Under the pieces are notes generated by a model. It was not told the origin of the DNA. It did not search any database and was given only the letters and a program-made list of their open reading frames with translations. A stretch of DNA of 64,000 nucleotides, taken from assembly GCF_011386835.1 (NCBI RefSeq), contig NC_088802.1, positions 1,674,001 through 1,738,000 of the forward strand, in the 5' to 3' direction. A program made the position numbers and the translations under genes. Numbering within the stretch: the first letter of the stretch is position 1; every line of letters starts with the position of its first letter. Positions 1 to 50,900 of this stretch are shown piece after piece. Source of the stretch: Chrysemys picta bellii (Eukaryota).

Positions 1-68
1 CCAAGACACAGCCTCAGGCCTGGCCCAGCCCCACGGCTGCCCCTCACAGCCCCCAGCCTGGACGTTCC

Positions 69-458
69 TGTGATGAACTGGGACTGTTCTTACTGTGGGC
101 TTTGAATGCTGACAGGGGAGTGTGGCTAGGATAGTCTGCATTGGGGGATGGGATCTGCCCGAAGGCGAATACCTGAGCGTGTAACATGAGAACCCAGGAA
201 GGGGTTGGAGGCCAGGTGACACCTTGGCCCGGGAAACTGAACAAAGGCGGTGGGAGGGGTCGCTGAAGGCAGAGTGCTGGAAGCGGGCTGGAGAGATGGC
301 TGGGAGGCAGAGATGGCTCTGACCCCCCAAAGGGGGGTGGGCTGGCATGCCCTGGGACCCCAAGATGGACCTAACTGAGGGGGTCCTGTTGTCTGTGCCT
401 GCAAGACCTGTCTTGCCTCGGGGGTGCAGGGCCTTGTGTCCCCCCACACTCCGTGACA
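69..458 (+). mobile_element. Gypsy-type solo LTR (family A) in C2 intron 12, ~70-bp internal deletion removing AATAAA
   Basis: TG...CA ends; TSD GTTCC/GCTCC; homologous to LTRs at 6957 and 10119. Confidence 0.9.
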
Positions 459-639
459 GCTCCTCCCTGGGACACAGGGCCAGCCCCTGCCCGCAGCTCT
501 AGGTGTCCCTCGGCAAAGCGAGAGGGGGCAGAGAAGGGAACGGATCCGATTCAGGGGCTGGTCCGTGCGCCTGGGCCCAGTCAGCTTGGCAAAGAGACAA
601 CCGAGGGGGCTGGAGAGCGGGACCCGGGGTGTGTATTCG

Positions 640-890
640 CCCCTTCCCGGAATGTAGGAGGCACACGAGGAAGTGACCAGGCAGCGGGCTCCAAACCCAC
701 ACTAGGCGTCGCCCAGCGTGCCGACAACCTGTGGAACTCACTGCCAGAGGATGCCGTAAGGCCAAAGCGGATGGGGCCGTGGGTGGCTACTAGCCGGGAT
801 GGGCAGGGACGCAGCCCTCGGACTGCCAGAGGCTGGGACTGGCCGGTGGGACGGCTCACTCGCCATCTGCCCTGCTCTGTTCCCCTTGTT
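640..890 (+). mobile_element. Degenerate CR1-type LINE 3-prime fragment (NLWNSLPED motif plus 3-prime tail); mirror ~48290-48540
   Basis: [11 protein letters not shown] resembles CR1 ORF2 C-terminus; tail aligns with fragment at 46497-46560. Confidence 0.6.
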
Positions 891-1377
891 GGCCCAGAGG
901 GCGGTTCTCCTGCCCGTCAGCGAGGCCCGGGCCAGCCGAGGTGCCAGGCTGGGCGTTCACAAGCCACTGGCCAGGGGCCGGGCAGGGATGCGGTGAGGGG
1001 AGCGAAGGGTTGGAGCTGAGGAAAGGGCCCGGGAGGCAACTCTGCCAGCTGGCACGTGCCAGGAAAGAGCCTAATGGTTAGAGCAGGGGGGCTGGGAGCC
1101 CGGACGCCTGGGTTCTCTCCCGGCTCTGGGAGGGGAGAGGGGGCTGGTGGGTTAGAGCGGGGGGAGGGGGGGAGCTGGGAGCCAGGACTCCTGGGTTCTC
1201 TCCCGGCTCTGGGAGGGGAGTGGGGGTTGATGGTTAGAACAGGGGGACTGGGAGCCAGGACTCCTGGGTTCTCTCCCCGACTCTGGGAGGGGAGAGGGGT
1301 CTAGTGGGTTGGAATGGGTGGGCTGGGAGCCAGGATTCCAGGGTTCCGAGGGACAAGTGCTGTCCGGGGTCCCTTAC

Positions 1378-1489
1378 CCACTTGCACTCTCCAGAGGGAC
1401 GTGTCTGTCACCTGGTTGAAGCAGTGTGCGGCCGTCAGGACCCACGAGTCAGAAACCAGGGACCCCCGGCACGAGGCGCCCGTTTTCCC
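1378..1489 (-). CDS. C2: C2 left exon 12 (catalytic His)
   Basis: 112 nt, [18 protein letters not shown]. Confidence 0.92.
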
Positions 1490-4400
1490 CTACGGACAGG
1501 GAGAGGGGCCAATGCAGGGAGGGGCCGTGGGAGGAGCACCCCCCCCAGCACTGCCAGGGGGCTCTGAACGGGACCCAGGTATCCAGGAAAGCGATCCCAG
1601 CCCCCGGGGAGGGAGGGAATGGGACAGTGGTTCCAGCTCCCCAGGGAAGGAGGGAACGGGACCCAGGTGTTTGGGACGGCGGTCCCAGCCCCCGGGGAGG
1701 GAGGGAACGGGACAGCGCCCCCCCAAGAGGGCTCAGCAGACAGACCCACCTTGATGACCACGTGCCAGGGGTTCCGCTGCTGGTGCGTGGCACTCTGCAA
1801 ATCATTCCCCAGCCCGCAGAGATCGTGGATGTTTTTGGTGTCTGTGCCATGCGGGGGGGGGAAGAGGGTTAGTCCTCGGGGTCACTGCTTGCCACGCCCC
1901 TCTGTGTGTCCCCCACACCCTAGGGTGACTGTCCTGGAAGACCCCCAAGCCCACATGGCCCCATAGTCCCAGCGGAGCCCTCCCCCAAACTGGTGCCCCA
2001 TGGGAAGAGACCCCCCCGCTGGCTCGGTTCCCTTCTGGGAGAGACGCCCCCACCCAGTTCCAGACATGGAGATGAGACGCCCCAGCCCTCCTCTTTGGCA
2101 GTTTGACTAGACAGCCTGCAAAGACGAGGCCCCTGTGCTGTGACAGGGGGACGCTGCGCCTGCTGTCGGCCTCAACGTACCCAGGACATCCTCGAACGCA
2201 GCCTTGAGATTCTGGCTGGAGTCCAACTTGAAGGCATGCCTCTCCCCTTCCTTCTTGGAAGCAATCTCATTAAGGCCACCCCAGTCCACCTCCTGCGTCC
2301 CAATCCCAAAGGCATAGATATCTAGGAGGCAAGTCAAGAAACTGCATGAGGGCACTGAGAATCTGAAGGGTTTGGAGCTGTTGTTGAGGCTGGAAGGTCA
2401 CTGGAGAGCCCTGTCCCTGGTAGTGTGGAGTCTACAACCAGCAGTGTGCCCAGAACCAATAATTAGGGCATTTTGGAACCCAGCAGTGCTTAGAAATGGT
2501 GTTGAGGCACCTAGAACCTGCGCTGATGCACCTAGAACAAATAGGGCAAATAGACCAGCAGCAAGGCACTAGGACTGGTACTGTGGTGCCTAGAATTGGC
2601 ACAGTGCCTAAAACCTATTACTAGGGCATAAGAACGGCCATACTTGGTCAGAGCAAAGGTCCATCTAGCCCAGTGTCCGGTCTTCTGACAGTGCCCAATG
2701 CCAGGTTCTTCAAAGGGAATGAACAGAAAAGGTAATCATCAAGTGAGCCATCCCCTGTTGCTCATTCCCAGCTTCTGACAGAGGACCTAGGACCATCTAG
2801 GACCTAATAATGCCTAGAATCAGTGTTGAGGTACCTAGAACCCAGAGTAGACGGAATCAGCTAGTGAGGAATAGGGTGCACAGAGGAACCTGGAAATTGT
2901 AGCATATAGATGCTAAAATTGAGTTATCATTATTCATACCTATAACTGGCACCTAGAATCAAGAACGCAGAAAACTTGGTAGCAAGATGAGCTACTAAAA
3001 AGTGTGGAACATCCCTCCCCCTGAACAAAGAAAAACGACCTTTTGGGTCAAAAAATTTCAGCGGGCAATGTTAAAACTGAAAAAATTGGCAAAAATTGAA
3101 AAATACCCAGAAACGTCTGAAGAAAATTCTTAATAAAAGCCTTTGTTGCTTTCATCAAAACTTTTTTGTGGGAAGAAAACTCATTTCATAGCCAGGTCTG
3201 GTCTTGGGAAAACAGAACAAGTGTAGTGGTACCTAGAACCAACGGTACAAATAACTTGGTGGTAAGCTACTGAGCTGCTTAGGATGGGTGTTGAAGCACC
3301 TAGAACCAGCAGTGGTAATATCTTCATAGAGGAGTACTATTGGGATACCCAGAAGAGATTAAATAACCTGTTAGGTAGCAGGACTAACACAGAGGGCATC
3401 CAGAATGTATGTAGACACATCTAGAACCAATGTTGCAAAGAACATGCTGCTGCCATGCCAACAGGTGATATTAAATCATCTAAAACCAACAGTACAAATA
3501 ACCTGTTGTGAAGGCACTGGGGTATACAGAGCTGATATAACACCAGGACAGAGTACACTTGGGCTTAAAGTGTCTGGTACCCCTGTTGAGGCATCTAAAG
3601 CCAAGAATATAAATAGAATACTGATGCGTCTAGAACTGGGAATTCCCAGATCCCTGAACTAGTTTTTAGGCACCTAGAACTCGTAACACCCAGATCCTGG
3701 CATTGCAGCGCCAAGGAAGATATTGACAAATCTAGAATGGGAAGTGCCAAGATCCTGGAACTGTAGCCACAGCCAAGTAATGAAGTGTTACGGGTTGGAT
3801 CACAGAAACCCCCTTGGGAGCGGTCACCCGATGTGCAAAGACTACCCCTGCTTCTGTTTTCCCTGCCAGCTCAGGACTCCAGCACCCTGTCTTGCTGAGC
3901 CAGACACTCCCGTCTGGCTCCAGACACAGACCCAGGGTCTGAATCACTTTCCCCAAAGCTGCAGGTTTACCTGAAAACAGCTCACAGAAGTGTGCTTGTC
4001 TTTAGCACTCGGATGCCCAACTCCCAGTGGGGTCTAAACCCAAATAAATCCGTTTTACCCTGTATAAAGCTTATGCAGGGCAAACTCATAAATTGTTCCC
4101 CCTCTATAACACTGATAGAGAGATATGCACAGCTGTTTGCTCCCTCAGGTATTAATACATACTCTGAGTAAATTACTAAATAAAAAGTGATTTTATTAAA
4201 TACGGACAGTAGGATTTAAGTGGTTCCAAGTAGTAACAGACAGAACAAAGTAAGTCACCAAGCAAAATAAAATAAAATACGCAAATCTATGCCTAATCAA
4301 ACTGAATACAGATAATCTCACCCTCAGAGATGCTTCAGTAAGCTTTTTCTCAGACTGGACACCTTCCAGGCCTGGGCACAATTCTTTCCCCTGGTACAGC

Positions 4401-7400
4401 TCTTGTTGCAGCTCAGGTGATAGCTAGGGGATTCCTCATGATGGCTCCTCTCCCCTTTGTGTTCTCTTCCACCCCTTTATATATCTTTTGCATAAGGCAG
4501 GAACCCTTTGTCCCTCTGGGTTTCCACCACCCCCCCTCACTAGAAAAGCACCAGGTTAAAGATGAATTCAGTTCAGGTGACATGATCACATGTCACTGAA
4601 AGACTTCATTGCTCACTTGCCAGCACACACATATACAGGGAGACTAATAGGTAAATACAGCCATCTGCAGACAATGGTCCTCGTTAATGGGAGTCATCAA
4701 GATTCCTAACCATCATTAATGGCCCACACTTCGCATAATTACAATAGGCCCTCAGAGTTACATTTTATATTTCTAGTTTTAGATACAAGAGTGGTACCTT
4801 TATACAAATGTGATGATCACACTCATTAGATTATAAGTTTTGTAATGATACCTTACAAGAGACCTTTTGCATGAATCATATTCCAGTTACATTATATTCA
4901 CTTATCATATTTTTATAAAACTATTCCAGTTACATTATATTCACTTCTTCTTATGTTTTTATAAAACCATACAGACTGCACAACGTCACATGAATCACCT
5001 AGAACCGGCATTAAGGCACCTAGAACAGGTAGATCACATCAATGAAGGACTGCAACTATCACTGGCATGTGGAATGGACCCAAGGGTGTTGGCAGACTCA
5101 CCTAGGTAGTCTTTCCTGTCTGGCTTGATCTCTAGGACCCCTTCTATCTTGTCTACTGCATCCTTGGGGGATTCGCCCATGTTGTATTTACCTGAAACAA
5201 CATCCTATGGGTTAGCAGATATGACCCATTCCCTGGCCCCAAGATAGGGGCCCTTTGACAAGGGGCTATGCAGTTGGGAAGCTTGACCTGCACCCACTGA
5301 GAGTGGGGATCAGATAACCCTTTTCCTGGCCCCCAAAGAATGGAACAGTCACTCCTCACCATCTGTCAGCACAATGATGGCATGCCGGATTTTCTTCCAC
5401 GCATCTGGCTTGCCCTGCCGGTCAAAGGACTGCTGCTGGAACAGAATCATGTTATACACCTCCAGCAGCGCCGCTCGGATGTTGGTTCCAGTCCCGTTGC
5501 CATGATCTGCAAAAGGATAAAATACCCCACATACCTAGAACTGGTGCTAAAGCACCTAGAGCCCAGGATATAGTGAAGCATCTGAAACCCATGTGGGGGA
5601 GCCTAGAGCCAGTAATGACAATAGCTAGAATAGATCTATCTAGAGCTGAATTCCAGAGGTGATGCGTGAGGGGGCATGTGGGATCACGTTCCTTCCTCCC
5701 CCCCAGATTTGCTGCTTGGCTTGGACAGAGCATGCTCACATGGACTGAGTATGCTCAGTAACACTGCTGAAGCCAGCTGCCCTTGCTCTGCCCCTTCCGC
5801 ATCAGCAGGCATGGGTCGTCTCTGCTGGTGTTGATGCATCTAAAGCCTTAAAGGAGGTGCGGCCATTGAGGCACCTAGAACCTATAATCCCCATGATGCA
5901 TGTTGAGGCATCTAGAACCAACAATGCCTGTGACTGGGGTTGAGGTGCCTAAAACCAATAGTGTCCACAAGTGATGCTAAATCATCAAGAACTGACAGTG
6001 CCCTGGACTAGTGTTGAGGCAACTAAAATTCTAGTGAGATTAAGGGCTGGTACTGAAGCACCTAGAACTTAACATTTCCTCCCACTCAATTTCACTCTGC
6101 ATTTTCCTTGGGTTGGGGAAATGAGTTCTCTTGAAGCACTAAATATATATATTTCCATCTGGGACTGTCTCTGTTTGCTCATATTGAATGCAATCAGGTC
6201 ACGATCACTGGTCTCTAGGCAACCACCAACTTGCAGTCCAGTGATCAATTCCTCTTTATCTGTCATAGTAAGATCCAAAATAGAGTTAGTTCATGGTGGG
6301 TGCGATAATTTCTGAGTTAGCAAGTTACATTCTATTATTTTTAGAAACCCTAATGATAGTTTATTACTGGCTTAACGAGACCACCACCGTCCATCTCCCA
6401 ATCTGAAAGCAGGTGTTGAGGCACCTAGAACCCAAGTAATATCCAGGGTCCTGAGGCACCTAATACAGGGTGTGAGTGGTATTGACAGCCCAAGACCCCC
6501 ATGCATTAGGGAGGCCCCGTGAAAAGGAAGCATGCAGGACCTTGAAAATTCATCCCCGTCTTTATCTTTCCGATAACCGCATCCGCGTCAGAAGCTTCGG
6601 GATCATAAATGGAAACGATTTTCTTGGGCTTGGTGGCGTAGGAGATCACAGCAAAGCTGGACGCTACTTCAAAGCTGGCAATCTGGAACGGGTGAGAGAT
6701 AGGGAGGGAGGAAGAGGAGAACAGCATATGAGAAAGAACAGGAAAGTGAGCTCTATCAATGAGAGACACCTAGACCCAGTGCTGAGGTGCCCAGAGCAGG
6801 TACTGAGGCACCTAAACCCAACACTGAGACACCTAGAATTTGCAGCACGTGTGGCTGGTATTGAAGAACCTAGAACCAAGGTGGCGATACCTAGAGCTTG
6901 CAATGTCTATAAGGTGTCATTGTAGGTAGAATCAGCATATGGGCACCTAGAGCTTGTGTGACGAACTGGGACTGTTCTTACTGTGGTCTTTGAATGCTGA
7001 CAGGGGAGTGTGGCTGGGATAGTCTGCATTGGGGGATGGGAGACGGCCCGAAGGAGAATACCTGAGCATGTAACATGAGAACCCAGGAAGGGGTTAGAGG
7101 CCAGGTGACACCTTTGCCCGGGAAACTGAACAAAGGCTGTGGGAGGGGTCGCTGAAGGGAGAGTTTCAGGAGCTGGCTGGTGACATGGCTGGGAGGCAGA
7201 CAGGGCTCTGACCTCCCAAGGGGGCTGTGGGGCTCTGGGACCCCAAGATGGACCTAACTGAGGGGATCCTGTTGTCTGTGCCTGCAAGACCTGTCTTGGA
7301 CTGTATTCCTGTTGTCTAAATAAACCTTCTGCTTTACTGGCTGGCTGAGAGTCAGGGTGAATCACAGGAAGCCGGGGGTGCAGGGCCCTGAGTCCCCCAC

Positions 7401-10400
7401 ACTCTGTGACAACCAGTGGCAGAGGTGGGATCTACTGCACCCCGTGGACAGCGCTTCCTGCAGTAAGTGACCAGGGAGCAGTAAAACGAAGGGGGATCAA
7501 CGGGGACCAGGTGGGCTGAAGAGTCAGAGAGAGACGGTTTCAGGGGGCGATTAACCCCTGGGAGTGTGTGACCAGAGAGAAGGACTGTTGCAGTAACAGG
7601 GTCTCCTGGGGGATCGCAGCGACTGGTCCCGGGGCGGCGGAGTCTGCAGCTCGACCCTGGCAGAGAGGGGGTGACCGAAGAAGGGCTGGCACACTAGGGG
7701 TCCCCCGGGAATGGTGGAAAGCAGAGAGCACAGGCCGGCGAGTGACCAGCCGGAGGATGGATGCTAAACGCCTTAAGAGCGACCTGGTGGAGCTGTGCGG
7801 GCAGAGGGGGCTGCGCATTGGGAGGTCCACCAAAGAACAGCTCATTGCCCGGCTGGAGGAGAGGGATCGCTTGGATGAACCAAGCCCTGTCCCAGAGGGA
7901 AGCCGCCCGGCGGATGCAGCGTGGGCCCCGGGGCCTGACCTGGCTGGGAGGGGTCAGACTGCTGCCGAGGACATCCCAAGACCCTGCCTACCTATACCTA
8001 GGGGAGGGGTTGGGGGAAGCCCAGCGAATACCGAGGGCACCCTGACCCCGGCAGCCAGCAGGGGATCGTCCCAGTGGAGCTCCCCGTCCCGGGAGCGGAT
8101 GCGACTGGAATATGACAGGGAGCTGAGACTGAAAGAGCTCGAGTTAAGGCAGCAAGAACTGAAGCAGGAGCGGGAAGAGAAGGAGAAACAACGTCAGCAT
8201 GAGCTGGAACTGGCCAGGCTGAGGAGCAGTGGGGCCCCAGCTGCGGTGAGTGAGGGGGGACCCAAGACTGCAAAGAGCTTTGATCAGTGCTTCCTGGCCC
8301 AGCGTAAGGAGGGGGAGGACATGGATACCTTCCTGATGGCCTTTGAGAATACCTGTGAGCTGCTCCAGGTTGACCCTGCAGACAGGCTCCAGTTTCTCAT
8401 CCCCTCACTGGACCCCACAGCCAGGGAGGTGTACAGCCGACTGAAAGGGGCGGAGACAGGGGACTACGAACTGTTCAAAAAGGCCCTGCTCCACGAGTTT
8501 GGGCTGACCCCTGAGACGTACCGGAAAAGGTTCCGGAGTCAGCGTAAAACCCGTGAGGTCACATACCTACAACTAGCCAACCGGGCGCAGGGGTATGCCC
8601 GCAAGTGGACAGCTGGGGCCCAAACTAAAGAGAACCAGCTTGACCTATTCGTACTGGAGCACGTGTATGAGCAGTGCCCATCCGACCTGAGGCGATGGTT
8701 GATGGACCAAAAACCAGAGAACCCGCAGCACGCAGGCCAGCTGGCCGACGAGTTTGTGAACAGTTGGGCAGGGGATAACAGGGAGAAGTCCCAAAGGAAC
8801 GGACCCGCCACAACGCAGAGAGAGAGTCACCATGGGACCTCCCAGCGAGGAAATATGGAGAACCCCCACCAAAGGGGAACATCCAGCATCAGGTCCATCC
8901 GACCCGCTCGAGGGGACCCACGGGACATGGGCTGCTATCACTGTGACCAGAAAGGCCACATACGGGCCCAGTGCCCCAGGCTCAGGGACAGACTGAGCGG
9001 AACCAACCCACAGAGGGTTGACTGGGTAGAGACCCAGCCGGGTGAAGGGCAGCATTCCCAGGAAAGGGGGGCTGGCAGAGTACCACCTGCTAAGGAGGGA
9101 GAAGAGCTCCAGGCCAGCTCCTCTGGGGGGCTGGATGCTCCAGACTCAGGGTTTTTGGTTTATACGGTGGGCGCGGGGCTGTCCCTCCGGAGAGAGTACC
9201 TTGTTCCCCTGGAGGTGGATGTGAGGAAGGTCAATGGATACTGGGATACGGGCGCAGAGGTCACGCTGGCCCGGCCCGAGGTGGTGGCCCCAGATCAGGT
9301 GGTGCCCAACACCTACCTGACCCTGATGGGGGTGAGTGGGACCCCAGTCAAAGTGCCCATGGCAAGGGTACACCTGAAGTGGGGGGCCAAGGAGGGCCCC
9401 AAGGACGTGGATGTACACCCGTATTTGCCCACTGAGGTGTTGATGGGGGGGAGACCTGGAGGGCTGGCCAAGTAACCCCCAGGGTGCCCTGGTCGTGACC
9501 CGTAGTCAGAGCCGGCGAGGGGCACTGCACCCAGGAGGCAGCTGGTGGTACCCCAGAAGTATCGCCGCCAGCTGCTGTGCCGGGCCCATGACATTCCCCT
9601 CTCAGGGCACCAGGGAACCTGGCGTACCCAGCAGAGGCTACGGAGCTTTTACTGGCCTGGGGTCTTTGTTACTGTCCGACAGTACTGCGGATCCTGTGAC
9701 CCCTGTCAGAGGGGGAGGAAGGCCCGGGACAAGGGGAAAACGGCTTTAGGACCCTTGCCCAGCATAGAGGATCCTTTCCGGAGGGTGGCCAAGGTTAAAA
9801 GGGCGGCTCTAAACCAAGAGAGCCCAAAGCACAGACCTCCAGACTGGAGCACTGGGAGAAGACCACAGCCCAGTTGGAGCCCCAGAAGTATTGGGGTGGG
9901 AAAAGGGCACAGGCCGCATAAACCTTCCCACATGCAAACTGCGAGTGCCATCGAGCAACCCCGACCTAAGGGGGGGCGTGAAACTGGAGGGGCCTGGTGT
10001 AATTCTCACCAAGGAATGGGAGGGATGCGGGGGCATCCATGGGAACGGGGGTAGGTTCGAACTTCCCCGGGTCACTGGCTGAAGTGACCCCGCTCAGTTC
10101 GGTCTCGAAGGGGGGAGATGTGACGAACTGGGACTGTTCTTACTGTGGTCTGTGAATGCTGACAGGGGAGTGTGGCTAGGATGGTCTGCTTTGGGGGATG
10201 GGAGTCTGCCCGAAGGCGAATACCTGAGCGTGTAACATGAGAACCCAGGAAGGGGTTGGAGGCCAGGTGACACCTTGGCCCGGGAAACTGAACAAAGGCT
10301 GTGGGAGGGGTCGCTGAAGGGAGAGTTTCAGGAGCTGGCTGATGACATGGCTGGGAGGCAGACAGGGCTCTGACCTCCCAATGGGGCTGGGGTGCCCTGG

Positions 10401-38989: not shown

Positions 38990-41900
38990 GTACGGGGGGG
39001 GGGGGGATGGAGCCCCCCAGGGACGGGGCAAGCGAGGGCGCGGAGGGAGTTCGGGGAGGTCGAGCTGCGTGCGGGGGGGGGGCGAAATGTCCTCCCTGCA
39101 CTCGTTCATTGGGCCTGTTTCTCGTTCCCCTTTTCCTGTCCCCCCATCCTGCAGCCCCTCCCTCCCGGCTTCTGCCTCCATCCCTCTCCCCTTTTCCTTC
39201 CCCTCTCGCAAGCCATATGTCCTTTCTTTCTTTCTTTCTTTCTCGGGCTCTTCTCCCCTCTCTCTCTCTCTCTTGTTTTTTCCCTTCCTTCTCTCTCATC
39301 TCTGCTCTTTTTGTCTCATTCTCTCTCTCCCTTTCCCCCCGAATCTCTCTCTCTCCTCCCTGGGGCCTTGCGTTCATTCCTGCTTGTTTCCCCTCTCCCC
39401 CAGGTGCCTGGGCGCAGCCCCCCGAGGAGGCAGCGCCCTCCTGTGGCCAGGACGTGGCCATCCGCAATGGCACGTTCGCCCTGTCGGACGGGTACCGCCC
39501 GGGCAGTGTGCTCACCTACTCCTGCCCCCCGGGCTTCTACCCCTACCCGCTGGGCAGCCGTCTCTGCCAGGACGACGGGCGCTGGACCACGCTCCGCACC
39601 CCCACCGGCTCCGTCTTCCCCCAGCCGCTCTGCCGAGGTACGGGGTGCCCGGACACCGGGGTTCTCTGGGAGGGGAGTGGGGGCTAGTGTTTAGAGCAGA
39701 GTGGGGGTTGGGGGTCAGGACTCCTGGGTTCAATCCCCGGCTCTGGGAGGGGAGTAGGGTCTAGTGGGGCATGGGGGCCAGGAGCCAGAACTCCTGGGTT
39801 CTCTCCACTCTGGTTCTGTTCTGGTTTCAGAGATCCGCTGCCCGGCGCAACTGGCGTTCGAGAACGGCTCGTTCCAGCCACGCCGGGCGTCCTACCCCGT
39901 GGGCAGCATCCTGACCTTCGAGTGCCTGGACGGGTACATGCTGCGGGGGCCGGCCCAGCGCACCTGCCAGGAGAACGGGCACTGGGACGGGGGCACCCCC
40001 GCCTGCGACGATGGAGGTGAGACCCCCTTATCCCCCTGCACCCCCATATCTCCTTGAGAGCCCCATCCCCCTGTGCCCCCATATCCCCTGAGAGCCCCCC
40101 CATTTCCCCTCTGCCCCATATCCCCCTGCGCCCCCAAGACCTCCCTGAGCCCCCATTGCACCCCTGAGAGCCCCCCATTTCCCCCGTATCCCCATATCTC
40201 CCTGCGCCCCCGAGAGCCCCCATACCCCCTGTATGCCCCAAGCACCCCCATGTCCCCAGGGAGCTCAGGGGTGGAGGTGGCTCCTGGGGGGTTGGAGACT
40301 GAGGGATTCGGGGGCCGTTCTCACCTCTCTCTCCCCCCAGCTGAGCACTGCCCCAACCCCGGGGTGCCGGCCGGGACGACGAAGAGCGGCAGCCGGTACC
40401 GGCTGGGCGAGCGGGTCTCCTACCGCTGCCAGGCAGGGCTGTCTCTGGTGGGGTCCGCGCAGCGCGTCTGCACTGAGGCTGGGGAGTGGTCGGGGGCCGA
40501 GCCCAGCTGCAGAGGTGAGTGATTCCCCCCGACCCCCACCGCCATTCCTGGCCCAGGGCTCCCCCTTCTGGCCCTCCACCCCCTCCAGGTTCCCCCACCC
40601 CTGGGGCTCCTTCACACACCTCCACAACTCTCCCCCCACCTGCCCAGGGTCCCCCTCCCCATCTCTCCTTGACCCTCGGTCTCCCCCCGACCTCCGGCGC
40701 CGTGTTCCCCGCTGCCTGGCTAACAGGGGCCCCGCTTCCCCCTGTCCGCGCAGCCCCTTTCTCCTACGACCGGGTGGAGGACGTCGGGGCCGAGTTCGGA
40801 GCCTCCTTCTCCAACGTCTTGGGCCTGGCCAGCTCCTCGGCCTCCTCCGGCCTCAACGCCTCCATCATAAAGCCACGTGAGTCTGCCTGGGAGCGTGAGG
40901 GGAGGCAGGCCCTGGGGGGATTCTGACGGGGTGGGGACCAAGGGGAGAGGGTGGTCTCTGCAGGGCGATGAGGATGCAGTGGGGGCGGAAGTCCAAGAGA
41001 TGGGGGTGGCAAGAGGCAGTGGGGAGAGGAGGGAATTGAGGGAGTGTGGGTTGGTACTAAGGGGTGTAAGGGAGGTGGGGCACACGGGGGGATCCCTCTC
41101 CCCAGGATGTTGCGGATGACCTCTCCCGGTTCCCCTGCCCAGCAACGTTCGTGGGCCGCAGGCTCATTCTTAGCGAGGACAGCGTCGTTAATATCTACCT
41201 GCTGGTGGACTCCTCAAAGAGCGTCAACAAAGAAAGCTTCCAGATCTTCAAGGAATGGGTGGAGAACATTGTGGACCGGGTGAGTCCGGGGTGGGGGCGG
41301 CAGCTCCGCTGTCAGGGACTATGTTTCAGCATTGGTTCTAAGCCCCTCAACACCAGCCATGGCCGCTGTGATTTCTAGGGGTGTCTACAATAGTACGGGG
41401 CACCTCAATGTCTGTTGTGGATGCTGCAAGTTCTAGGTCCTTGTATGTCAGCTCAAAGGTTCTTCACTGCCAGACATGGATGACACAAGTTCTGTGCACA
41501 TGCATGCTGGTTCTAGGTACATCAACACCAGCCATGGACTCTGCAAGTTCTAGAGGCTTGTGTGCAGGCGCTATATATCACAGGCCAGCCATGAATGCTA
41601 CAGGTTCTAGATGCCTGCATGCCTGTTCCAGGTATCTCAATAGTAGCCTTGGGCACTGCAAATTGTAGCTTCTCCCACATCTGATCTAGGTATTTCAGTG
41701 CCAACAATGAGAGCTGCAAGTTGTAGGGGCCTGTACCCCAGTTCTAGGAATCTCGCTGCTGCAAGCTGTCGTGGAGTGTGGGGGAACTCAGGGCCCTGCA
41801 CCCCCGGCTTCCTGCGATTCAACCTGACTCTCAGCCAGCCAGTAAAGCAGAAGGTTTATTTAGACAACAGGAATACAGTCCAAGACAGGTCTTGCAGGCA

Positions 41901-44900
41901 CAGACAACAGGACCCCCCCTCAGTTAGGTCCATCTTGGGGTCCCAGGGCCCCACAGTCCCCTTGGGAGGTCAGAGCCCTGTCTGCCTCCCAGCCATGTCA
42001 CCAGCCAGCTCCTGAAACTCTCCCTTCAGCGACCCCTCCCACAGCCTTTGTTCAGTTTCCCGGGCAAAGGTGTCACCTGGCCTCTAACCCCTTCCTGGGT
42101 TCTCATGTTACATGCTCAGGTATTCTCCGTCGGTCAGTCTCCGATCCCGCAATGCAGACTATCCTAGCCACACTCCCCTGTCAGCATTCACAGACCACAG
42201 TAAGAACAGTCCCAGTTCGTCACACAAGCTCTAGGTGCCCACGCTGCCCAGGATTGGTCCTGTTTTGAGCAGGGGGTTGGACTAGATGACTTTCTGAGGT
42301 CCCTTCCAAGCCTGATATTCTATGATTCTATGATATGCTGATTCTACCTACAATGACACCTTATGGACATTGCAAGCTCTAGGTATCACCGCCTTGGTTC
42401 TAGGTTCTTCAATACCAGCCACACGTGCTGCAAATTCTAGGTGTCTCAGTGTTGGGTTTAGGTGCCTCAGTACCTGCTCTGGGCCCCTCAGCACTGGGTC
42501 TAGGTGTCTCTCATTGCCAGAGCTCACTTTCCTGTTCTTTCTCATATGCTGTTCTCCTCTTCCTCCCTCCCTATCTCTCACCCGTTCCAGATTGCCAGCT
42601 TTGAAGTAGCGTCCAGCTTTGCTGTGATCTCCTACGCCACCAAGCCCAAGAAAATCGTTTCCATTTATGATCCCGAAGCTTCTGACGCGGATGTGGTTAT
42701 CGGAAAGATAAAGACGGGGATGAATTTTCAAGGTCCTGCATGCTTCCTCTTCACGGAGCCTCCCTAATGCATGGGGGTCTTGGGCTGTCAATACCACTCA
42801 CACCCAGTATTAGGTGTCTCAGGACCCTGGATATTACTTGGGTTCTAGGTGCCTCAACATCTGCTTTCAGATTGGGAGATGGACGGTGGTGGTGTCGTCA
42901 AGCCAGTAATAAACTATCATTAGGGTTTCTAAAAATAATAGAATGTAACTTGCTAACTCAGAAAGTATCACACCCACCATGAACTAACTCTATTTTGGAT
43001 CTTACTATGACAGATAAAGAGGAATTGATCACTGGACTGCAAGTTGGTGGTTGCCTAGAGACCAGTGATCGTGACCTGATTGCATTCAATATGAGCAAAC
43101 AGAGACAGTCCCAGATGGAAATATATATATTTAGTGCTTCAAGAGAACTCATTTCCCCAACCTAAGGAAAATGCAGAGTGAAATTGAGTGGGAGGAAATG
43201 TTAAGTTCTAGGTGCTTCAGTACCAGCCCTTAATCTCACTAGAATTTTAGTTGCCTCAACACTAGTCCAGGGCACTGTCAGTTCTTGATGACTTAGCATC
43301 ACTTGTGGACACTATTGGTTTTAGGCACCTCAACCCCAGTCACAGGCATTGTTGGTTCTAGATGCCTCAACATGCATCATGGGGATTATAGGTTCTAGGT
43401 GCCTCAATGGACGCACCTCCTTTAGATGCATCAACACCAGCAGAGACGACCCATGCCTGCTGATGGGGGAGGGGCAGAGCGAGGGCAGCTGGCTTCAGCA
43501 GTGTTACTGAGCATACTCAGTCCATGTGAGCATGCTCTGTCCAAGCCAAGCAGCAAATCTGGGGGGTGGAAGGAACGTGATCCCACATGCCCCCTCACGC
43601 ATCACCTCTGGAATTCAGCTCTAGATAGATCTATTCCATCTATTGTCATTACTGGCTCTAGGCTCCCCCACATGGGTTTGAGATGCTTCACTATATCCTG
43701 GGTTCTAGGTGCTTTAGCACCAGTTCTAGGTATGTGGGGTATTTTATCCTTTTGCAGATCATGGCAACGGGACTGGAACCAACATCCGAGCGGCGCTGCT
43801 GGAGGTGTATAACATGATCCTGTTCCAGCAGCAGTCCTTTGACCGGCAGGGCAAGCCAGATGTGTGGAAGAAAATCCGGCATGCCATCATTGTGCTGACA
43901 GATGGTGAGGAGTGACTGTTCCATTCTTGGGGGGCCAGGAAAAGGGTTATCTGATCCCCACTCTCAGTGGGTGCAGGTCAAGCTTCCCAACTGCATAGCC
44001 CCTTGTCAAAGGGCCCCTATCTTGGGGCCAGGGAATGGGTCATATCTGCTAACCCATAGGATGTTGTTTCAGGCAAATACAACATGGGAGGATCCCCCAA
44101 GGATGCAGTAGACAAGATAGAAGGGGTCCTAGAGATCAAGCCAGACAGGAAAGACTACCTAGGTGAGTCTGCCAACACCCTTGGGTCCATTCCACATGCC
44201 AGTGATAGTTGCAGTCCTTCATTGATGTGATCTACCTGTTCTAGGTGCCTTAATGCCGGTTCTAGGTGCTTCATGTGACGTTGTGCAGTCTATATGGTTT
44301 TATAAAAACATAAGAAGAAGTGAATATAATGTAACTGGAATAGTTTTATAAAAATATGATAAGTGAATATAATGTAACTGGAATATGATTCATGCAAAAA
44401 GTCTCTTGTAAGGTATCATTACAAAACTTATAATCTAATGAGTGTGATCATCACATTTGTATAAAGGTACCACTCTTGTATCTAAAACTAGAAATATAAA
44501 ATGTAACTCTGAAGGCCTATTGTAATTATGCGAAGTGTGGGCCATTAATGATGGTTTGGAATCTTGATGACTCCCATTAACCAGGACCATTGTCTGCAAA
44601 TGGCTGTGTTTACCCGTAAGTCTCCCTGTATACCTGTGTGCTGGCAAGTGAGCAATGAAGTCTTGCAGTGACATGTGATCATGTCACCTGAACTGGAATC
44701 CATCTTTAACCTGGTGCTTTTCCAGTGAGGGAGGGTGGAAACCCAGAGGGACAAAGGGTTCCCACCTTATGCAAAAGATATATAAAGGGGTGGAACAGAA
44801 CAAGGGAGAGAGGAGCCATCATGAAGAATCCCCTAGCTATCACGTGAGCTGCAACAAGAGCTGTACCAGGGGAAAGGATTGTGCCCAGGCCTGGAAGGGG

Positions 44901-47900
44901 TCCAGTCTGAGGAAAACACTTACTGAAGCATCTCTGAGGGTGAGATTATCTGTATTCAGTTTGATTAGACATAGATTTGGACATTTTATTTTATTTTACT
45001 TGGTGACTTACTTTGTTCTCTCTGTTACTACTTGGAACCACTTAAATCCTACTGTCTGTATTTAATAAAATCACTTTTTATTTAGTAATTTACTCAGAGT
45101 ATGTATTAATACCTGGGGGAGCAAACAACTGTGCATATCTCTCTATCAGTGTTATAGATGGCGAACAATTTATGAGTTTGCCCTGCATAAGCTTTATACA
45201 GGGTAAAACGGATTTATCTGGGTTTAGACCCCATTGGGAGTTGGGCATCTGAGTGCTAAAGACAAGCACACTTCTGTGAGCTGTTTTCAGGTAAACCTGC
45301 AGCTTTGGGACAAGTGATTCAGACCCTGGGTCTGTGTTGGAGCAGACGGGAGTGTCTGGCTCAGCAAGACAGGGTGCTGGAGTCCTGAGCTGGCAGGGAA
45401 AACAGGAGCAGGGGTAGTCTTTGCACATTGGGTGACCGCTCCCAAGGGGGTTTCTGTGATCCAACCCGTCACACTTCATTACTTGGCTGTGGCTACAGTT
45501 CCAGGATCTTGGCACTTCCCATTCTAGATTTGTCAATATCTTCCTTGGCGCTGCAATGCCAGGATCTGGGTGTTACGAGTTCTAGGTGCCTAAAAACTAG
45601 TTCAGGGATCTGGGAATTCCCAGTTCTAGACGCATCAGTATTCTATTTATATTCTTGGCTTTAGGTGCCTCAACAGGGGTACCAGACACTTTAAGCCCAA
45701 GTGTACTCTGTCCTGGTGTTATATCAGCTCTGTATACCCCAGTGCCTTCACAACAGGTTATTTGTACTGTTGGTTTTAGATGATTTAATATCACCTGTTG
45801 GCATGGCAGCAGCATGTTCTTTGCAACATTGGTTCTAGATGTGTCAACATACATTCTGGATGCCCTCTGTGTTAGTCCTGCTACCTAACAGGTTATTTAA
45901 TCTCTTCTGGGTATCCCAATAATACTCCTCTATGAAGATATTACCACTGCTGGTTCTAGGTGCTTCAACACCCATCCTAAGCAGCTCAGTAGCTTACCAC
46001 CAAGTTATTTGTATCGCTGGTTCTAGGTACCACTACACTTGTTCTGTTTTCCCAAGACCAGACCTGGCTATGAGATGAGTTTTCTTCCCACAAAAAAAGT
46101 TTTGATGAAAGCAAAAAAGGCTTTTATTAAGAATTTTCTTCAGACGATTCTGGGTATTTTTCAATTTTTGCCAATTTTTTCAGTTTTAACTGAAAAGAGA
46201 TATTGCCTGCTGAAAATTTTTGACCCAAAAGGTCGTTTTTCTTTGTTCAGGGGGAGGGATGTTCCACACTTTTTAGTAGCTCATCTTGCTACCAAGTTTT
46301 CTGCTTTCTTGATTCTAGGTGCCAGTTATAGGTATGAATAATGATAACTCAATTTTAGCATCTATATGCTACAATTTCCAGGTTCCTCTGTGCACCCTAT
46401 TCCTCACTAGCCGATTCCTTCTACTCTGGGTTCTAGGTACCTCAACACTGATTCTAGGCATTATTAGGTCCTAGATGGTCCTAGGTCCTCTGTTTGTCAG
46501 AAGCTGGGAATGAGCAACAGGGGATGGTTCACTTGATGATTACCTTTTCTGTTCATTCCCTTTGAAGCACCTGGCATTGGGCACTGTCAGAAGACCGGAC
46601 ACTGGGCTAGATGGACCTTTGGTCTGACCAAGTATGGCCGTTCTTATGCCCTAGTAATAAGTTTTAGGCACTGTGCCAATTCTAGGCACCACAGTACCAG
46701 TCCTAGTGCCTTGCTGCTGGGCTATTTGCCCTATTTGTTCTAGGTGCATCAGCACAGGTTCTAGGTGCCTCAACACCATTTCTAAGCACTGCTGGGTTCC
46801 AAAATGCCCTAATTATTGGTTCTGGGCACACTGCTGGTTGTAGACTCCACACTACCAGGGTCAGGGCTCTCCAGTGACCTTCCAGCCTCAACACCAGCTC
46901 CAAACCCTTCAGATTCTCAGTGCCCTCATGAAGTTTCTTGACTTGCCTCCTAGATATCTATGCCTTTGGGATTGGGACGCAGGAGGTGGACTGGGGTGGC
47001 CTTAATGAGATTGCTTCCAAGAAGGAAGGGGAGAGGCACGCCTTCAAGATGGACTCCAGCCAGAATCTCAAGGCTGCGTTCGAGGATGTCCTGGGTACGT
47101 CGAGGCCGACAACGGGCGCGGCGTCCCCCTGTCACAGCGCAGGGGCCTCGTCTTTGCAGGCTGTCTAGTCAAACTGCCAAGGAGGAGGGCTGGGGCGTCT
47201 CCTCTCCATGTCTGGAACAGGGTGGGGGCGTCTCTCCTAGAAGGGAACCGAGCCAGCGGGGGGTCTCTTCCCATGGGGCACCAGTTGGGGGGGGGGCTCC
47301 GCTGGGACTATGGGGCCATGTGGGCTTGGGGGTCTTCCAGGACAGTCACCCTAGGGTGTGGGGGACACACAGAGGGGCGTGGCAAGCAGTGACCCCGAGG
47401 ACTAACCCTCTTCCCCCCCCATGGCACAGACACCAAAAACATCCACGATCTCTGCGGGCTGGGGAATGATTCGCAGAGTGCCACGCACCAGCAGCGGAAC
47501 CCCTGGCACGTGGTCATCAAGGTGGGTCTGTCTGCTGAGCCCTCTGGGGGGGCGCTGTCCCGTTCCCTGCCTCCCCGGGGGCTGGGACCGCCGTCCCAAA
47601 CACCTGGGTCCCGTTCCCTCCTTCCCTGGGGAGCTGGAACCACTGTCCCGTTCCCTCCCTCCCCGGGGGCTGGGATCGCTTTCCTGGACACCTGGGTCCC
47701 GTTCCCTCCCTCCCCGGGGGCTGTGAGCACTGCAGAGCCCCCTGGCAGTGCTGGGGGGGGGGCGCTCCTCCCATGGCCCCTCCCTGCATTGGCCCCTCTC
47801 CCTGTCCGTAGGGGAAAACGGGCGCCTCGTGCCGGGGGTCCCTGGTTTCTGACTCGTGGGTCCTGACGGCCGCACACTGCTTCAACCAGGTGACAGACAC

Positions 47901-50900
47901 GTCCCTCTGGAGAGTGCAAGTGGGTAAGGGACCCCGGACAGCACTTGTCCCTCGGAACACTGGAATCCTGGCTCCCAGCCCACCCATTCCAACCCACTAG
48001 ACCCCACTCCCCTCCCAGAGCCGGGGAGAGAACCCAGGAGTCCGGGCTCCCAGCCCCCCCCGCTCTAACCACTAGCCTCTTTCCTGGCACGTGCCAGCTG
48101 GCAGAGTCGTCTCCCCGGGCCCTTCTCCCCCGTCTGACCTTTCCTCAGCTCCGAGCTGGGCCCTTCGTTCCCCTCACCGCACCCCTGCCCGGGCCCTGGC
48201 CAGTGGCTTGTGAAAGCCCAGCCTGGCACCTCAGCTGGCCCGGGCCTCGCTGACGGGCAGGAGAACCGCCCTATGGGCCGACAAGGGGAACCAACAGAGC
48301 AGGGCAGATGGCGAGTGAACCATCCCACCGGCCAGTCTCAGCCTCTGGCAGTCCGAGGGCTGCGTCCCTGCCCATCTCGGCTAGTAGCCACCCACGGCCC
48401 CATCCGCTTTGGCCTTACGGCATCCTCTGGCAGTGAGTTCCACAGGTTGTCGGCACGCTGGGCGACGCCTAGTGTGGGTTTGGAGCCGCTGCCTGGTCAC
48501 TTCCTCATGTGCCTCCTGCATTCCGGGAAGGGGCGAATACACTCCCCGGGTCCCGCTCTCCAGCCCCCTCGGTTGTCTCTTTGCCAAGCTAACTGGGCCC
48601 AGGCGCACGGACCAGCCCCTGAATCGGATCCGTTCCCTTCTCTGTCCCCTCTCGCTTTGCCGAGGGGCACCTGGAGCTGCGGGCAGGGGCTGGCCCTGTG
48701 TCCCAGGGAGGAGCTGTCACGGAGTGTGGGGGGACACAAGGCCCTGCACTCCCGACTCCCTGCGATTCACCATGACTCTCAGCCAGCCAGTAAAGCAGAA
48801 GGTTTATTTGGATGACAGGAACACAGTCCAAGACAGGTCTTGCAGGCACAGACAACAGGGCCCCCCTCAGTTAGGTCCATCTTGGGGTCCCAGGGCATCC
48901 CAGCCCCCCCTTGGGAGGTCAGAGCAATCTCTGCCTCCCAGCTATCTCACCACCCAGCTTCCAAGACTCTGCCTTCAGCGACCCCTCCCACAGCCTTTGT
49001 TCAGTTTCCCGGGCCAAGGTGTCACCTGGCCTCTAACCCCTTCCTGGGTTCTCATGTTACATGCTCAGGTATTCGCCCTCGGGCAGACTCCCAAACCCAT
49101 CCCCCAATGCAGACTATCCTAGCCACACTCCCGTCAGCATTCACAGACCACAGTAAGAACAGGCCCAGTTCATCACAGGAGCGTCCAGGATGGGGGCTGT
49201 GAGGGGCGGCCGTGGGGCTGGGCCAGGCCTGAGGCTGTGTCTTGGGGCAGGGCCGGAGGAGATCTCCATCAAGAACAGGACCGACCACCCGAAGTACAAC
49301 ATCACGGCCAAGGCCGGCCAGGGCATCCCCGAATACTACGACTACGACGTGTCGCTGATCGAACTGCAGAAGGCCGTGCAGTTCTCCGGGCGGGTCAGGT
49401 GAGAGCGGGGCAGGGGCCTGGCCCCTCTGGGGGGCACCGGCTCCCACCGGCCCCAGGGCAGGGACTGGCTGGCTCAGGGGGGCGGGGAATGGGGCGGGGC
49501 CTGTCCCCTCTAGGGGGCGCCGGCTCCCTTCCAGCCCCAGGGCAGGGACTGGCTGGCTCAGGGGGGCAGGGAATGGGGCAGGGGCCTGTCCCCTCTAGGG
49601 GGCGCCGGCTCCCACCGGCCCCAGGGCAGGGACTGGCTGGCTCAGGGGGGCGGAGAATGGGGCAGGGACCTGTCCCCTCCAGGGCGGCTGGCCCTGATCG
49701 AGCCCAGCTCAGCGCCCGTCTGTCTCCTCCCCAGACCCATCTGCCTGCCCTGCACAACGCAAGCGAACCGAGCGCTGAAGAAGCCCCAGGGGGCGACGTG
49801 CAGGGATCACGGTGAGTGCGACGTCCCAGGGGCCGTGATCGCCCCGTGTGTCCCTCGAGCCTGGCGCCCCAGGGAGCGTCTTGCTGCACCGGCTCCGCGG
49901 GCAGGGGCATCAGGGCGTGGGCAGGGGCGGGCGGCTCGGGGAGCAGGGATGAGGGCGTTGGGGCCCCGCTCGGAACTGCGGGCGGCTTGGGGGGCAGGGC
50001 AGGGACGGCTGCTAGCCAGCACCCTGGCTTCCCTGGCGTGGAGGAGCAGTTGCCGGGTGGCTCCCACCGACTTCCGATCCGCCAGCTCCCGGTACGGCCC
50101 GACGTGAAAACCTCTGCGCTGAATGGAAGCAGAAATCGGGGTGGGGGTGACCCCGACACCCCCCCCCCCAATGACCCCTCTAATTTTAACACCCACTAAC
50201 CTTCACTCTAACCACCCCCGCTCCTTCCAAGGAATGAACCCAGGCGTCCCGGCCCCAGCCCCCGCTGCCCGTCCAGGGAACCCAGGCGTCCCGGCCCCGC
50301 CCCGCCCCCCGCCGCCCGTCCAGGGAACCCAGGCGTCCCGGCCCCGCCCCCCGCCGCCCGTCCAGGGAACCCAGGCGTCCCGGCCCCGGCCCCCCGCCGC
50401 CCGTCCAGGGAACCCAGGCATCCTGCCCTAACCCGGCTGTCTGCCCTGCAGAGCTGGAACTGCTGAGCCAGGAGCAGGTCCCCGCCCACTTCATCTCCCT
50501 GGACAACCAGAGGTTAAACGTGGAAATCAAGACCAACAAGTCGGTAGGTGGGGCCCTGTGCCCCAGAGTGTGGGGGGGTCTGTCCCGGGCGCCGTGGGGG
50601 GCTCCTGCCCCATTTGGGGGGCCATTTGCAGCAGGGAGAAGATGCTGCCCCTGTCCCAGCTGTTCTGATGGGGTGTGTGTCCCCCGTGCCCCCCATCTCT
50701 GCTGCGCTAGGGGGCAGGGGAGCCCGGCTGTGCCTGGAGCGGGAGCTGCCCAGGTGCTGGCCTGGCAGGCTGGAGAGCTCGGCTTAGAGACACACACTGA
50801 CACCCTCATGCACCCGGTCTCCCTCGCACGCCCTGACACGTGCACGCACCCCGGTCTCCCTCGCACACCCTGACACGTGCACGCACCCCTGTCTCCCTCG

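What the first reader, a model, noticed from the sequence alone, without database searches (positions are those of the whole stretch)
1..49246. Large inverted duplication of the ZBTB12-C2 block in MHC class III, or a haplotype false duplication across the gap
Everything from 1 to ~20400 recurs reverse-complemented at ~32255-49246, giving C2(-), ZBTB12(+), spacer, ZBTB12(-), C2(+), CFB(+). Mammals have one C2 and one ZBTB12 here. Real differences between arms (TE presence/absence, VNTR lengths, many amino-acid changes) argue for two distinct sequences. However, the arms are on separate contigs joined by a 500-N placeholder and both break beside the same repeat, which is also how two divergent MHC haplotypes get mis-scaffolded.
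Basis: partly seen in the sequence, partly recalled or inferred. Interest (0 to 1): 0.7.

Follow-up and report, generated by a model that had tools for sequence, protein, structure and literature searches.

The report
Likely retained haplotype, not gene duplication
The mirror-image second copy of the ZBTB12-C2 gene block is really in the assembled sequence, but it is most likely the animal's other chromosome copy (a very divergent MHC haplotype) wrongly scaffolded next to the first across a gap, not an extra pair of genes.

Summary
The inverted repeat is real in the assembly. Bases 1-20412 match 32255-49245 reverse-complemented in eight colinear blocks, with about 2.9% substitutions, 92 indels, VNTR differences and a full LTR element facing a solo LTR.

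Both limits are technical. The left arm is cut by the window edge inside C2. The right arm starts at the first base after the only gap (500 N). The gap flanks do not overlap and are unrelated tandem repeats.

Public contigs of four individuals, laid on 5.4 kb of arm A, each show one contig layer in the unique parts:
- X14 matches arm B almost exactly (70 of 73 substitutions, and 31 gap letters where the arms differ by 30).
- X4 is mostly arm-A type.
- X8 and X1 are intermediate.

So the arm differences look like segregating alleles, not fixed paralogues.

Verdict: a retained haplotig (false heterotype duplication), confidence about 0.78. Read depth could not be tested, because no raw reads were served. 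A real duplication carried by only some chromosomes is not excluded (about 0.12).

The scan holds several unchecked notes of similar duplications beside gaps elsewhere in this genome.

By-product: two very divergent haplotypes. Their C2 forms differ by about 19 residues, including Arg/His at the activation site.

The parts
1..20412 (.). Arm A, on contig 1 (which holds window 1-31754). It carries C2(-), ZBTB12-like(+) and tandem arrays. Its left limit is the window edge, not a real boundary.
32255..49245 (.). Arm B, at the start of contig 2. It is the reverse complement of arm A, and homology begins at the first base after the gap.
31755..32254 (.). The only assembly gap (500 N placeholder). 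The flanks share no overlap: G 64% on the left, C 55% on the right, and different tandem repeats. I did not fill it or look its letters up.
20420..20732 (+). Unique spacer found only on contig 1. It looks like a CpG-island promoter (GC boxes, CCAAT, TGACGTCA), with an ATG at 20588 followed 24 bases later by a splice-donor-like GT. I read it as the putative first exon of the next gene downstream of ZBTB12.
   Evidence: sequence read directly; no counterpart on contig 2. That it is an exon is inference.
20733..31754 (.). G-rich satellite of 81-bp units, about 136 copies, running to the end of contig 1.
17862..19151 (+). ZBTB12-like single-exon ORF on arm A (429 aa, BTB plus C2H2 fingers).
33643..34932 (-). 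ZBTB12-like ORF on arm B. It agrees with the arm-A copy at 428/429 aa and differs at 4 of 1290 nt.
1..13377 (-). C2 on arm A: ATG at 13377, then signal peptide, three Sushi exons, linker, VWA exons and the first protease exon. The 3' part lies left of the window.
38944..53597 (+). C2 on contig 2, apparently complete. It has the ATG at 38944, Sushi x3, VWA, protease exons with the catalytic Ser (reads GESGG), and a C-terminal exon at 53365-53597.
11025..11180 (-). Arm-A exon coding the C2 activation site and the MIDAS start. It has His where arm B and human C2 have the scissile Arg.
41136..41290 (+). The same exon on arm B (VGR|R...DSSKS). It differs from arm A at 13 of about 155 nt, giving about 10 aa changes.
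6940..10578 (.). LTR retroelement in a C2 intron of arm A. Its LTRs lie at 6940-7411 and 10119-10578 and are 91% alike. It holds a gag-like ORF at 7568-9475(+) with SCAN and zf-CCHC domains.
41774..42241 (.). Solo LTR at the same site in arm B. It is a 5'/3' LTR recombinant: its left four-fifths match the 5' LTR type and its right fifth the 3' LTR type.

Best explanation
Contig 1 (window 1-31754) and the start of contig 2 (from 32255) are the two parental haplotypes of one single-copy locus: next gene - ZBTB12 - C2 - CFB.

The two haplotypes differ so much here (about 3% substitutions, an LTR element against a solo LTR, VNTR lengths) that the assembler kept both in the primary assembly. Both contigs broke inside tandem repeats. 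The Hi-C scaffolder then placed the short contig next to its allelic partner, behind a 500-N placeholder, and in the orientation that makes the pair look like a palindrome.

Shown here:
- the repeat itself;
- its coincidence with the gap and with the window edge;
- the lack of any sequence continuity across the gap;
- the allele-like distribution of arm-specific letters among other individuals.

Inferred:
- that the source animal is heterozygous for the two forms;
- the assembler and scaffolder history.
For: 1. Arm B starts at the very first base after the only gap, and arm A is cut only by the window edge. The gap flanks are unrelated tandem repeats of opposite strand composition with no overlap.

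2. Contigs of four public runs were laid on arm A 1566-6940. Each shows one contig layer in the unique parts. Of the 37 single-copy differences listed, 33 fall on A/B-differing sites, and at all 33 the letter read is the arm-B letter.

3. X14 carries the B letter at 33 of 33 of those sites. Its four contigs differ from arm A by 70 letters and 31 gap letters where the arms differ by 73 and 30. That is arm-B type at about 99.9%, with no trace of arm A. Equal-copy paralogues should have given a mosaic.

4. X4 is mostly A-type. For example, its contig at 3097-3417 is identical to arm A across 7 A/B sites. Differences from arm A fall in a graded series: X4 29 (of 68 sites where the arms differ), X1 36 (of 63), X8 58 (of 71), X14 70 (of 73). 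The word shares of arm A group by organism label: 0.65-0.69 for organism B, 0.54-0.56 for organism C.

5. Divergence is patchy: 0.2-0.8% over ZBTB12 and its flank, 2-5% in C2. Recombining alleles would look like this, though constraint on ZBTB12 could also explain it.

6. The putative first exon at 20588(+) is followed only by satellite, the gap and an inverted ZBTB12. It has no downstream exons in the scaffold as built.

7. The features match the published criteria for false heterotype duplications: an assembly gap between the copies, and locally raised heterozygosity (PMC9516828).

8. If the genome is SLU_Cpb5.0 (not verified), its methods fit. It was built with hifiasm on about 20x HiFi, then ARCS and 3D-DNA, with no purging step mentioned. 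The primary assembly is 35-43 Mb larger than either haplotype assembly (PMC13077969).

9. Unchecked scan notes list several other duplications abutting gaps in this genome.
Against: - No read depth could be obtained. Only Logan contigs were served, and these pop bubbles and 'show presence, not absence'.
- The arm divergence (2.2-3%) is 5-6 times the genome-wide heterozygosity reported for that assembly (0.48%). It even exceeds the reported genome-wide difference from Trachemys (1.8%). As alleles, the two forms must therefore be very old (MHC-type long-lived lineages) or sit in a fast-mutating region.
- X1, the best holder and possibly the source animal, carries three letters that neither arm has (6405, 6450, 6518). 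Either it is not the source, or more than two forms exist in one animal.
- Both C2 copies look intact: start codon present, and no frameshift in the exons compared.
- What lies left of the window is unknown.
Confidence: 0.78

Rival explanations
1. A real inverted duplication that only some chromosomes carry. The reference chromosome would hold both ZBTB12-C2 copies around the satellite, formed from two divergent allelic lineages, while other chromosomes such as those of X14 hold one copy.
For: Both C2 and both ZBTB12 copies are intact. X1 shows both forms at 1620-2094, plus a third variant at 6405-6518, which would fit more than two sequences in one animal if X1 is the source. Single-layer contigs in X14 and X4 do not exclude a copy at lower dosage.
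Against: It needs an extra, unusual event, and that event would have to end exactly at a contig end beside a placeholder gap. No sequence joins the spacer or satellite to arm B. The putative exon at 20588 would be left without the rest of its gene. No individual laid shows two full layers.
Confidence: 0.12
2. An old, fixed inverted duplication (a palindrome) of the ZBTB12-C2 block in this turtle lineage. The two arms would be true paralogues, and the arm-A C2 would be evolving a new or lost function (His at the activation site).
For: Arm divergence of 2-3% equals or exceeds the reported genome-wide divergence between genera. Amino-acid changes cluster in one C2 exon. There is a long satellite spacer between the arms.
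Against: X14 holds only arm-B-type sequence at 70 of 73 differing sites, in one layer. X4 holds mostly arm-A type. Fixed paralogues should both be present in every individual. The inner boundary equals the gap edge.
Confidence: 0.05
3. Contig 1 does not belong to the source animal's locus at all. It would be foreign DNA from another individual or taxon, or a chimeric contig.
For: Arm A carries letters that none of the four laid individuals has (2155, 2161, 2163, 2226, 5175, 5981, 6788). The best public holder has only 0.73 of its words.
Against: The candidate assembly paper states that all DNA came from one animal. X1 and X4 carry long stretches identical to arm A (table 8). Arm A is colinear with arm B throughout.
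Confidence: 0.03

Closest known systems
False heterotype duplication (retained haplotig) in a primary genome assembly, as described by Ko et al. 2022 (PMC9516828) and the Vertebrate Genomes Project
   Same: Two copies sit on one scaffold, separated by an assembly gap. The region is far more heterozygous than the rest of the genome. Whole genes appear as false gains. Contig ends lie in repeats. The case sits in a GC-rich, repeat-rich region of the kind where such errors were reported to persist.
   Different: Haploid read depth, discordant read pairs and 1-copy k-mers in the source's own reads were not testable here. The support instead comes from allele-like segregation in other individuals' contigs. 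The copies are inverted rather than tandem.
Real large palindromes and inverted segmental duplications (arms around a spacer, usually kept more than 99% alike by arm-to-arm gene conversion; my own knowledge)
   Same: Two inverted arms of at least 17 kb, carrying intact genes, around a spacer of about 12 kb.
   Different: The arms are only about 97% alike. One arm-spacer junction is a placeholder gap. One arm type is missing from another individual (X14).
Long-lived, highly divergent MHC haplotype lineages (my own knowledge of MHC balancing selection and trans-species polymorphism)
   Same: Local divergence is several times the genome average. Structural differences (an LTR element against a solo LTR, VNTR lengths) separate the two forms. 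Both lineages are seen under several organism labels.
   Different: Such depth is usually described for class I/II genes, not for the class III C2-ZBTB12 segment. Linkage to classical MHC genes was not examined here.

Membership tests
False heterotype duplication (retained haplotig) | An assembly gap, or a stretch unsupported by reads, lies between the two copies on the same scaffold. | tested here: met
   The only gap in the window (31755-32254, 500 N) lies between the arms. Arm B starts at 32255. The flanks do not overlap. The criterion is from PMC9516828.
False heterotype duplication (retained haplotig) | About half (haploid) read depth on each copy in the source individual's reads. | not testable with these tools
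   Only Logan contigs were served, no raw reads. The tool itself warns that contig depth is no copy number.
False heterotype duplication (retained haplotig) | The copy-specific sequence behaves as haplotype-specific (allelic) variation. | tested here: met
   Met in other individuals only. X14 is arm-B type at 70 of 73 sites in one layer, X4 is mostly arm-A type, and X8 and X1 are intermediate. It was not tested as 1-copy k-mers in the source animal.
False heterotype duplication (retained haplotig) | Discordant linked or paired reads, or a Hi-C or optical map inconsistent with two copies. | not testable with these tools
   No such data can be reached here.
Real inverted duplication / palindrome | Both arm-to-spacer junctions are supported by contiguous sequence. 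| tested here: not met
   Arm A continues into the spacer and satellite (20412-31754). Arm B's inner end is the gap.
Real inverted duplication / palindrome | If the duplication is fixed, both paralogous forms are present in every individual. | tested here: not met
   X14 shows single-layer contigs of pure arm-B type, and X4 is mostly arm-A type. Caveat: contigs can drop a lower-coverage variant.
Complement C2 (the gene in both arms) | Three Sushi domains, a VWA domain with a MIDAS motif and a serine-protease domain, with closer similarity to C2 than to factor B. | tested here: met
   One Sushi piece scored 1e-13 against Pfam, and two further Sushi-like exons were read by eye. VWA pieces scored below the Pfam threshold. 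The MIDAS motif reads DSSKS. The C-terminal exon piece hits human C2 at 1e-12 against factor B at 1.7e-4. The activation site aligns with human LGR|K.
ZBTB12 | A BTB domain plus C-terminal C2H2 fingers, lying next to the 5' end of C2. | tested here: met
   BTB scored 4e-24 and zf-C2H2 1.5e-15, in a single-exon 429-aa ORF next to C2 in both arms. Orthology to ZBTB12 rests on this architecture plus synteny (my own knowledge). No name-returning sequence search was run.

The most novel reading that the evidence does not exclude
The palindrome is real on at least some chromosomes. In that case this turtle carries a second, intact ZBTB12-C2 pair around an 11-kb G-rich satellite. The extra C2 has His instead of the scissile Arg at its activation site and a hypervariable exon coding the start of the VWA domain. 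It would be a complement C2 paralogue that cannot be switched on in the usual way.
Probability: 0.12. Interest if true: 0.55.

Novelty: not a real feature. Interest (0 to 1): 0.17.

Why it matters
If taken at face value, the assembly and any annotation built on it would report a second C2 and a second ZBTB12 in the turtle MHC class III region. That would be a false gene gain, and it would distort comparative work on complement and MHC evolution. Flagging it also marks this stretch of the scaffold as mis-joined: contig 1 is probably allelic to the start of contig 2, and the gene that starts at about 20588 is separated from its body.

The biological residue is modest but real. The locus seems to carry two very divergent haplotype lineages, about 3% apart against a reported genome-wide 0.48%. 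Their C2 alleles differ by about 19 residues and a 2-aa signal-peptide indel, including Arg/His at the cleavage site. A population study could follow this up.

Tried and rejected
- Finding C2 exons by similarity to the CFB side: tblastn of arm-B pieces against 49246-64000 gave only transposon and LTR matches. Exons were instead found from stop-free pieces, Pfam and PDB sequence hits.
- Read-depth test: not possible, because all 24 runs are kept as contigs. I do not use the contig depths as evidence, as the tool instructs. I note only that they do not contradict haploid-level arms.
- Looking left of the window: the search of earlier findings does not accept negative places, and it holds no notes near the window start. 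Whether the window begins at a scaffold end is therefore unknown.
- One script that contained typed peptide strings came back unrun. I replaced it with a coordinates-only script.
- Sequencing or consensus error as the source of the arm differences: rejected. ts/tv is 1.52, there are many CpG-type transitions, and the same letters recur in independent individuals. However, 26 of the 37 one-base indels sit beside homopolymers.
- Rfam scan of the window: no match.
- The 3949-aa 'ORF' at 20544-32393(-) is an artefact. It arises because the satellite strand has no stop codons and the ORF runs on through the N run.
Full report

Yes. The window has a single gap, 500 N at 31755-32254. Self-BLAST on the opposite strand, followed by colinear chaining, shows that 1-20412 matches 32255-49245 in eight colinear blocks. 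A base-by-base recount gives 14,655 aligned bases, 426 substitutions (2.9%), ts/tv 1.52 and 92 indel events. The cleanest block is A 1566-6940 against B 47704-42333, with 117 substitutions and 15 indels.

Both arms carry a 429-aa single-exon ORF with a BTB domain and C2H2 fingers, at 17862-19151(+) and 33643-34932(-). These agree at 428/429 residues and differ at 4 of 1290 nt. I call them ZBTB12 on architecture and position next to C2. I ran no name-returning sequence search.

Both arms also carry the 5' two-thirds of a C2 gene:
- the start codon, at 13377(-) in arm A and 38944(+) in arm B;
- three Sushi exons and a linker;
- an exon with the activation site and the MIDAS motif;
- four further VWA exons and the first protease exon.

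The C-terminal exon on contig 2 matches human C2 at 1e-12, against factor B at 1.7e-4. Exons were searched one by one, by reference. I built no joined model.

**2. Corrections to the description**

- The outer limit, 49246, is not a boundary. The alignment starts at window base 1, and C2 on the right continues through protease exons to a stop at about 53.6 kb. Arm A is therefore cut by the window edge inside C2, and the repeat may be longer than 20 kb.
- The inner limit of arm B is exactly the first base after the gap.
- Contig 2 begins inside an 81-bp SINE-derived tandem array (32255-32598). Contig 1 passes through its own copy of that array (20127-20411). It then continues through 313 unique bases (20420-20732) and ends in an 11-kb G-rich satellite of 81-bp units, about 136 copies.
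- CFB was not verified inside the window. An unchecked scan note places CFB exon 8 about 3.7 kb beyond its end.
- The sequence is a GC-rich reptile genome. Earlier scan notes call it the painted turtle. I did not verify the species.

**3. The gap, tested first**

The 2 kb on either side share only G-run matches of 41 bases or fewer. The left flank is 64% G and the right flank 55% C. They belong to different tandem-repeat families, and no reading frame or gene crosses the gap. The spacer has no counterpart on contig 2. The join is therefore a scaffolding decision that no sequence supports.

**4. Alleles or paralogues?**

Read depth was the obvious test, but every run offered is kept as Logan contigs. 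Depth could therefore not be used, and the tool says so itself.

What the contigs do show is which letters each individual carries. I laid four runs on arm A 1566-6940: X1 and X14 (organism label A), X8 (label C, which shares a species label with A) and X4 (label B). In the unique parts, X14, X8 and X4 each give a single contig layer apart from two isolated two-form sites (X8 at 1725, X4 at 1987). X1 shows both forms over 1620-2094.

Of the 37 single-copy differences listed, 33 fall on sites where the arms differ, and in all 33 the letter read is the arm-B letter.

| Run (organism label) | B letter at the 33 listed A/B sites | Contig differences from arm A | Sites where the arms differ in the same intervals |
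|---|---|---|---|
| X14 (A) | 33 | 70 substitutions, 31 gap letters | 73 substitutions, 30 gap letters |
| X8 (C) | 28 | 58 | 71 |
| X1 (A) | 25 (6 of them with both forms visible) | 36 | 63 |
| X4 (B) | 11 | 29 | 68 |

X14 is therefore arm-B type at about 99.9%, with no arm-A trace over 4.1 kb. X4 has stretches identical to arm A; for example, 3097-3417 has 0 differences over 7 A/B sites.

If A and B were fixed paralogues present at equal dose, the bubble-popped contigs of every animal should be A/B mosaics or double layers. A pure-B animal and a mostly-A animal are what alleles, or recombining allelic lineages, look like. The shares of arm-A words also group by organism label: 0.65-0.69 for B, 0.54-0.56 for C, and 0.51 for X14.

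It rests on contigs from four individuals, and contigs can drop a lower-coverage variant.

**5. Other points that fit a retained haplotig**

- Divergence is patchy: 0.2-0.8% across ZBTB12 and its 3' flank, against 2-5% across C2. Recombining alleles with different coalescence times would give this, although constraint on ZBTB12 explains part of it.
- The unique spacer looks like a CpG-island promoter. It has an ATG at 20588 and, 24 bases later, a splice-donor-like GT. It lies about 1.4 kb downstream of ZBTB12 in the same orientation, which is where EHMT2 starts in human (my own knowledge). In the scaffold as built, this first exon is followed only by satellite, the gap and an inverted ZBTB12. 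Its gene body is missing, as expected if contig 1 is misplaced.
- Published criteria for false heterotype duplications are a gap between the copies, locally raised heterozygosity, haploid depth and haplotype-specific k-mers (PMC9516828). The first two are met here. The last two are untestable here.
- A 2026 paper describes a painted-turtle assembly made with hifiasm on about 20x HiFi, then ARCS and 3D-DNA, with no purging step mentioned. It reports heterozygosity of 0.48-0.71% and a primary assembly 35-43 Mb larger than either haplotype assembly (PMC13077969). That the window comes from this assembly is plausible but not verified: it has 500-N gaps and a long satellite assembled end to end.
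- The scan holds several unchecked notes of duplications abutting gaps in this genome. One is an inverted SKIV2L piece between two 500-N gaps, 19 kb to the right. In one case a follow-up agent preferred a retained haplotype.

**6. What argues the other way**

- The arms differ by 2.2-3%. That is about 5-6 times the reported genome-wide heterozygosity, and more than the reported genome-wide difference from Trachemys (1.8%). As alleles they must be old lineages, as is known for MHC regions, or the local mutation rate must be high.
- Both gene pairs are intact.
- X1, the best holder and possibly the source animal (runs of 2020 and 2023 from one sample), carries three letters that neither arm has (6405, 6450, 6518). 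The word spanning 6516-6524 in X1 is neither A nor B. The simplest reading is that X1 is not the source. If it is the source, more than two forms exist in one animal, which would favour a real duplication.
- I therefore keep 0.12 for a real duplication carried by only some chromosomes, and 0.05 for an old fixed one.

**7. Anatomy of the differences**

These are real variation, not error.

- The LTR element of arm A (6940-10578) has LTRs only 91% alike, so the insertion long predates the A/B split. The solo LTR of arm B is a recombinant: 5'-LTR type on the left four-fifths and 3'-LTR type on the right fifth. This is the classic result of LTR-LTR recombination.
- Tandem arrays differ in copy number between the arms.
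- In C2, most exons differ by 1-3 nt. One exon is an outlier: 41136-41290 in arm B, 11025-11180 in arm A. It has 13 differences in about 155 nt and about 10 residue changes, including His for the scissile Arg in arm A. Synonymous change is also raised there, so a gene-conversion tract from a paralogue is as likely as selection. The CFB exon needed to test this lies outside the window.
- The signal peptides differ by a 2-aa indel.

**8. Verdict**

The inverted duplication is present in the assembly but is most likely not present in the animal's chromosomes. It is best read as a retained second haplotype scaffolded beside its partner (confidence about 0.78).

Novelty class: not a real feature. 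The interest is low, apart from the pointer to two unusually divergent class III haplotypes with distinct C2 alleles.

Noticed in passing
window 41136-41290 (+) and 11025-11180 (-): The C2 exon coding the activation site and the MIDAS start is a divergence hot spot between the two forms: 13 differences in about 155 nt and about 10 residue changes. Arm A has His at the scissile Arg. Synonymous change is raised too, which suggests a conversion tract from a paralogue rather than selection alone.
   Followed up: partly
window 20420-20732 (+): A CpG-island-like promoter (GC boxes, CCAAT, TGACGTCA) with an ATG at 20588 and, 24 bases later, a splice-donor-like GT. It lies 1.4 kb downstream of ZBTB12 in the same orientation, the position where EHMT2 starts in human (my own knowledge). 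No downstream exons are present in the window.
   Followed up: partly
window 20733-31754: An 11-kb satellite of about 136 copies of an 81-bp G-rich unit (GC about 0.75, GC skew about +0.68), rich in G-runs and assembled up to the contig end. It probably lies in an intron of the gene that starts at 20588.
   Followed up: no
window 6940-10578 and 41774-42241: An old LTR retroelement (LTRs 91% alike) with a 635-aa gag-like ORF carrying SCAN and zinc-knuckle domains lies in a C2 intron of arm A. Arm B has the recombinant solo LTR at the same site. Further copies of the same LTR family lie at 1-415 and 48715-49245.
   Followed up: yes
window 1168-1346, 13687-14583, 19153-19654, 20127-20411, 32255-32598, 33063-33641, 38223-38632, 61576-61760: The same SINE-like unit of about 75-81 bp has been amplified into short tandem arrays at many sites. 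Copy numbers differ between the arms, and one such array is where contig 2 begins.
   Followed up: partly
window 1566-6940, run X1: The best public holder carries letters at 6405, 6450 and 6518 that neither arm has, and it shows both arm types at 1620-2094. Either it is not the source animal, or that animal holds more than two forms. This remains unexplained.
   Followed up: partly
window 52750-53100: The catalytic-serine exon of C2 on contig 2 reads GESGG rather than the usual GDSGG, so the Ser is kept but Asp is replaced by Glu. The 3' introns of C2 hold several minisatellites: 37 bp x13 at 50797-51288 and 85 bp x8 at 51575-52246.
   Followed up: partly
window 20544-32393 (-): the ORF listing reports a 3949-aa ORF. 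It is an artefact: the satellite strand has no stop codons, and the ORF runs on through the N run.
   Followed up: yes
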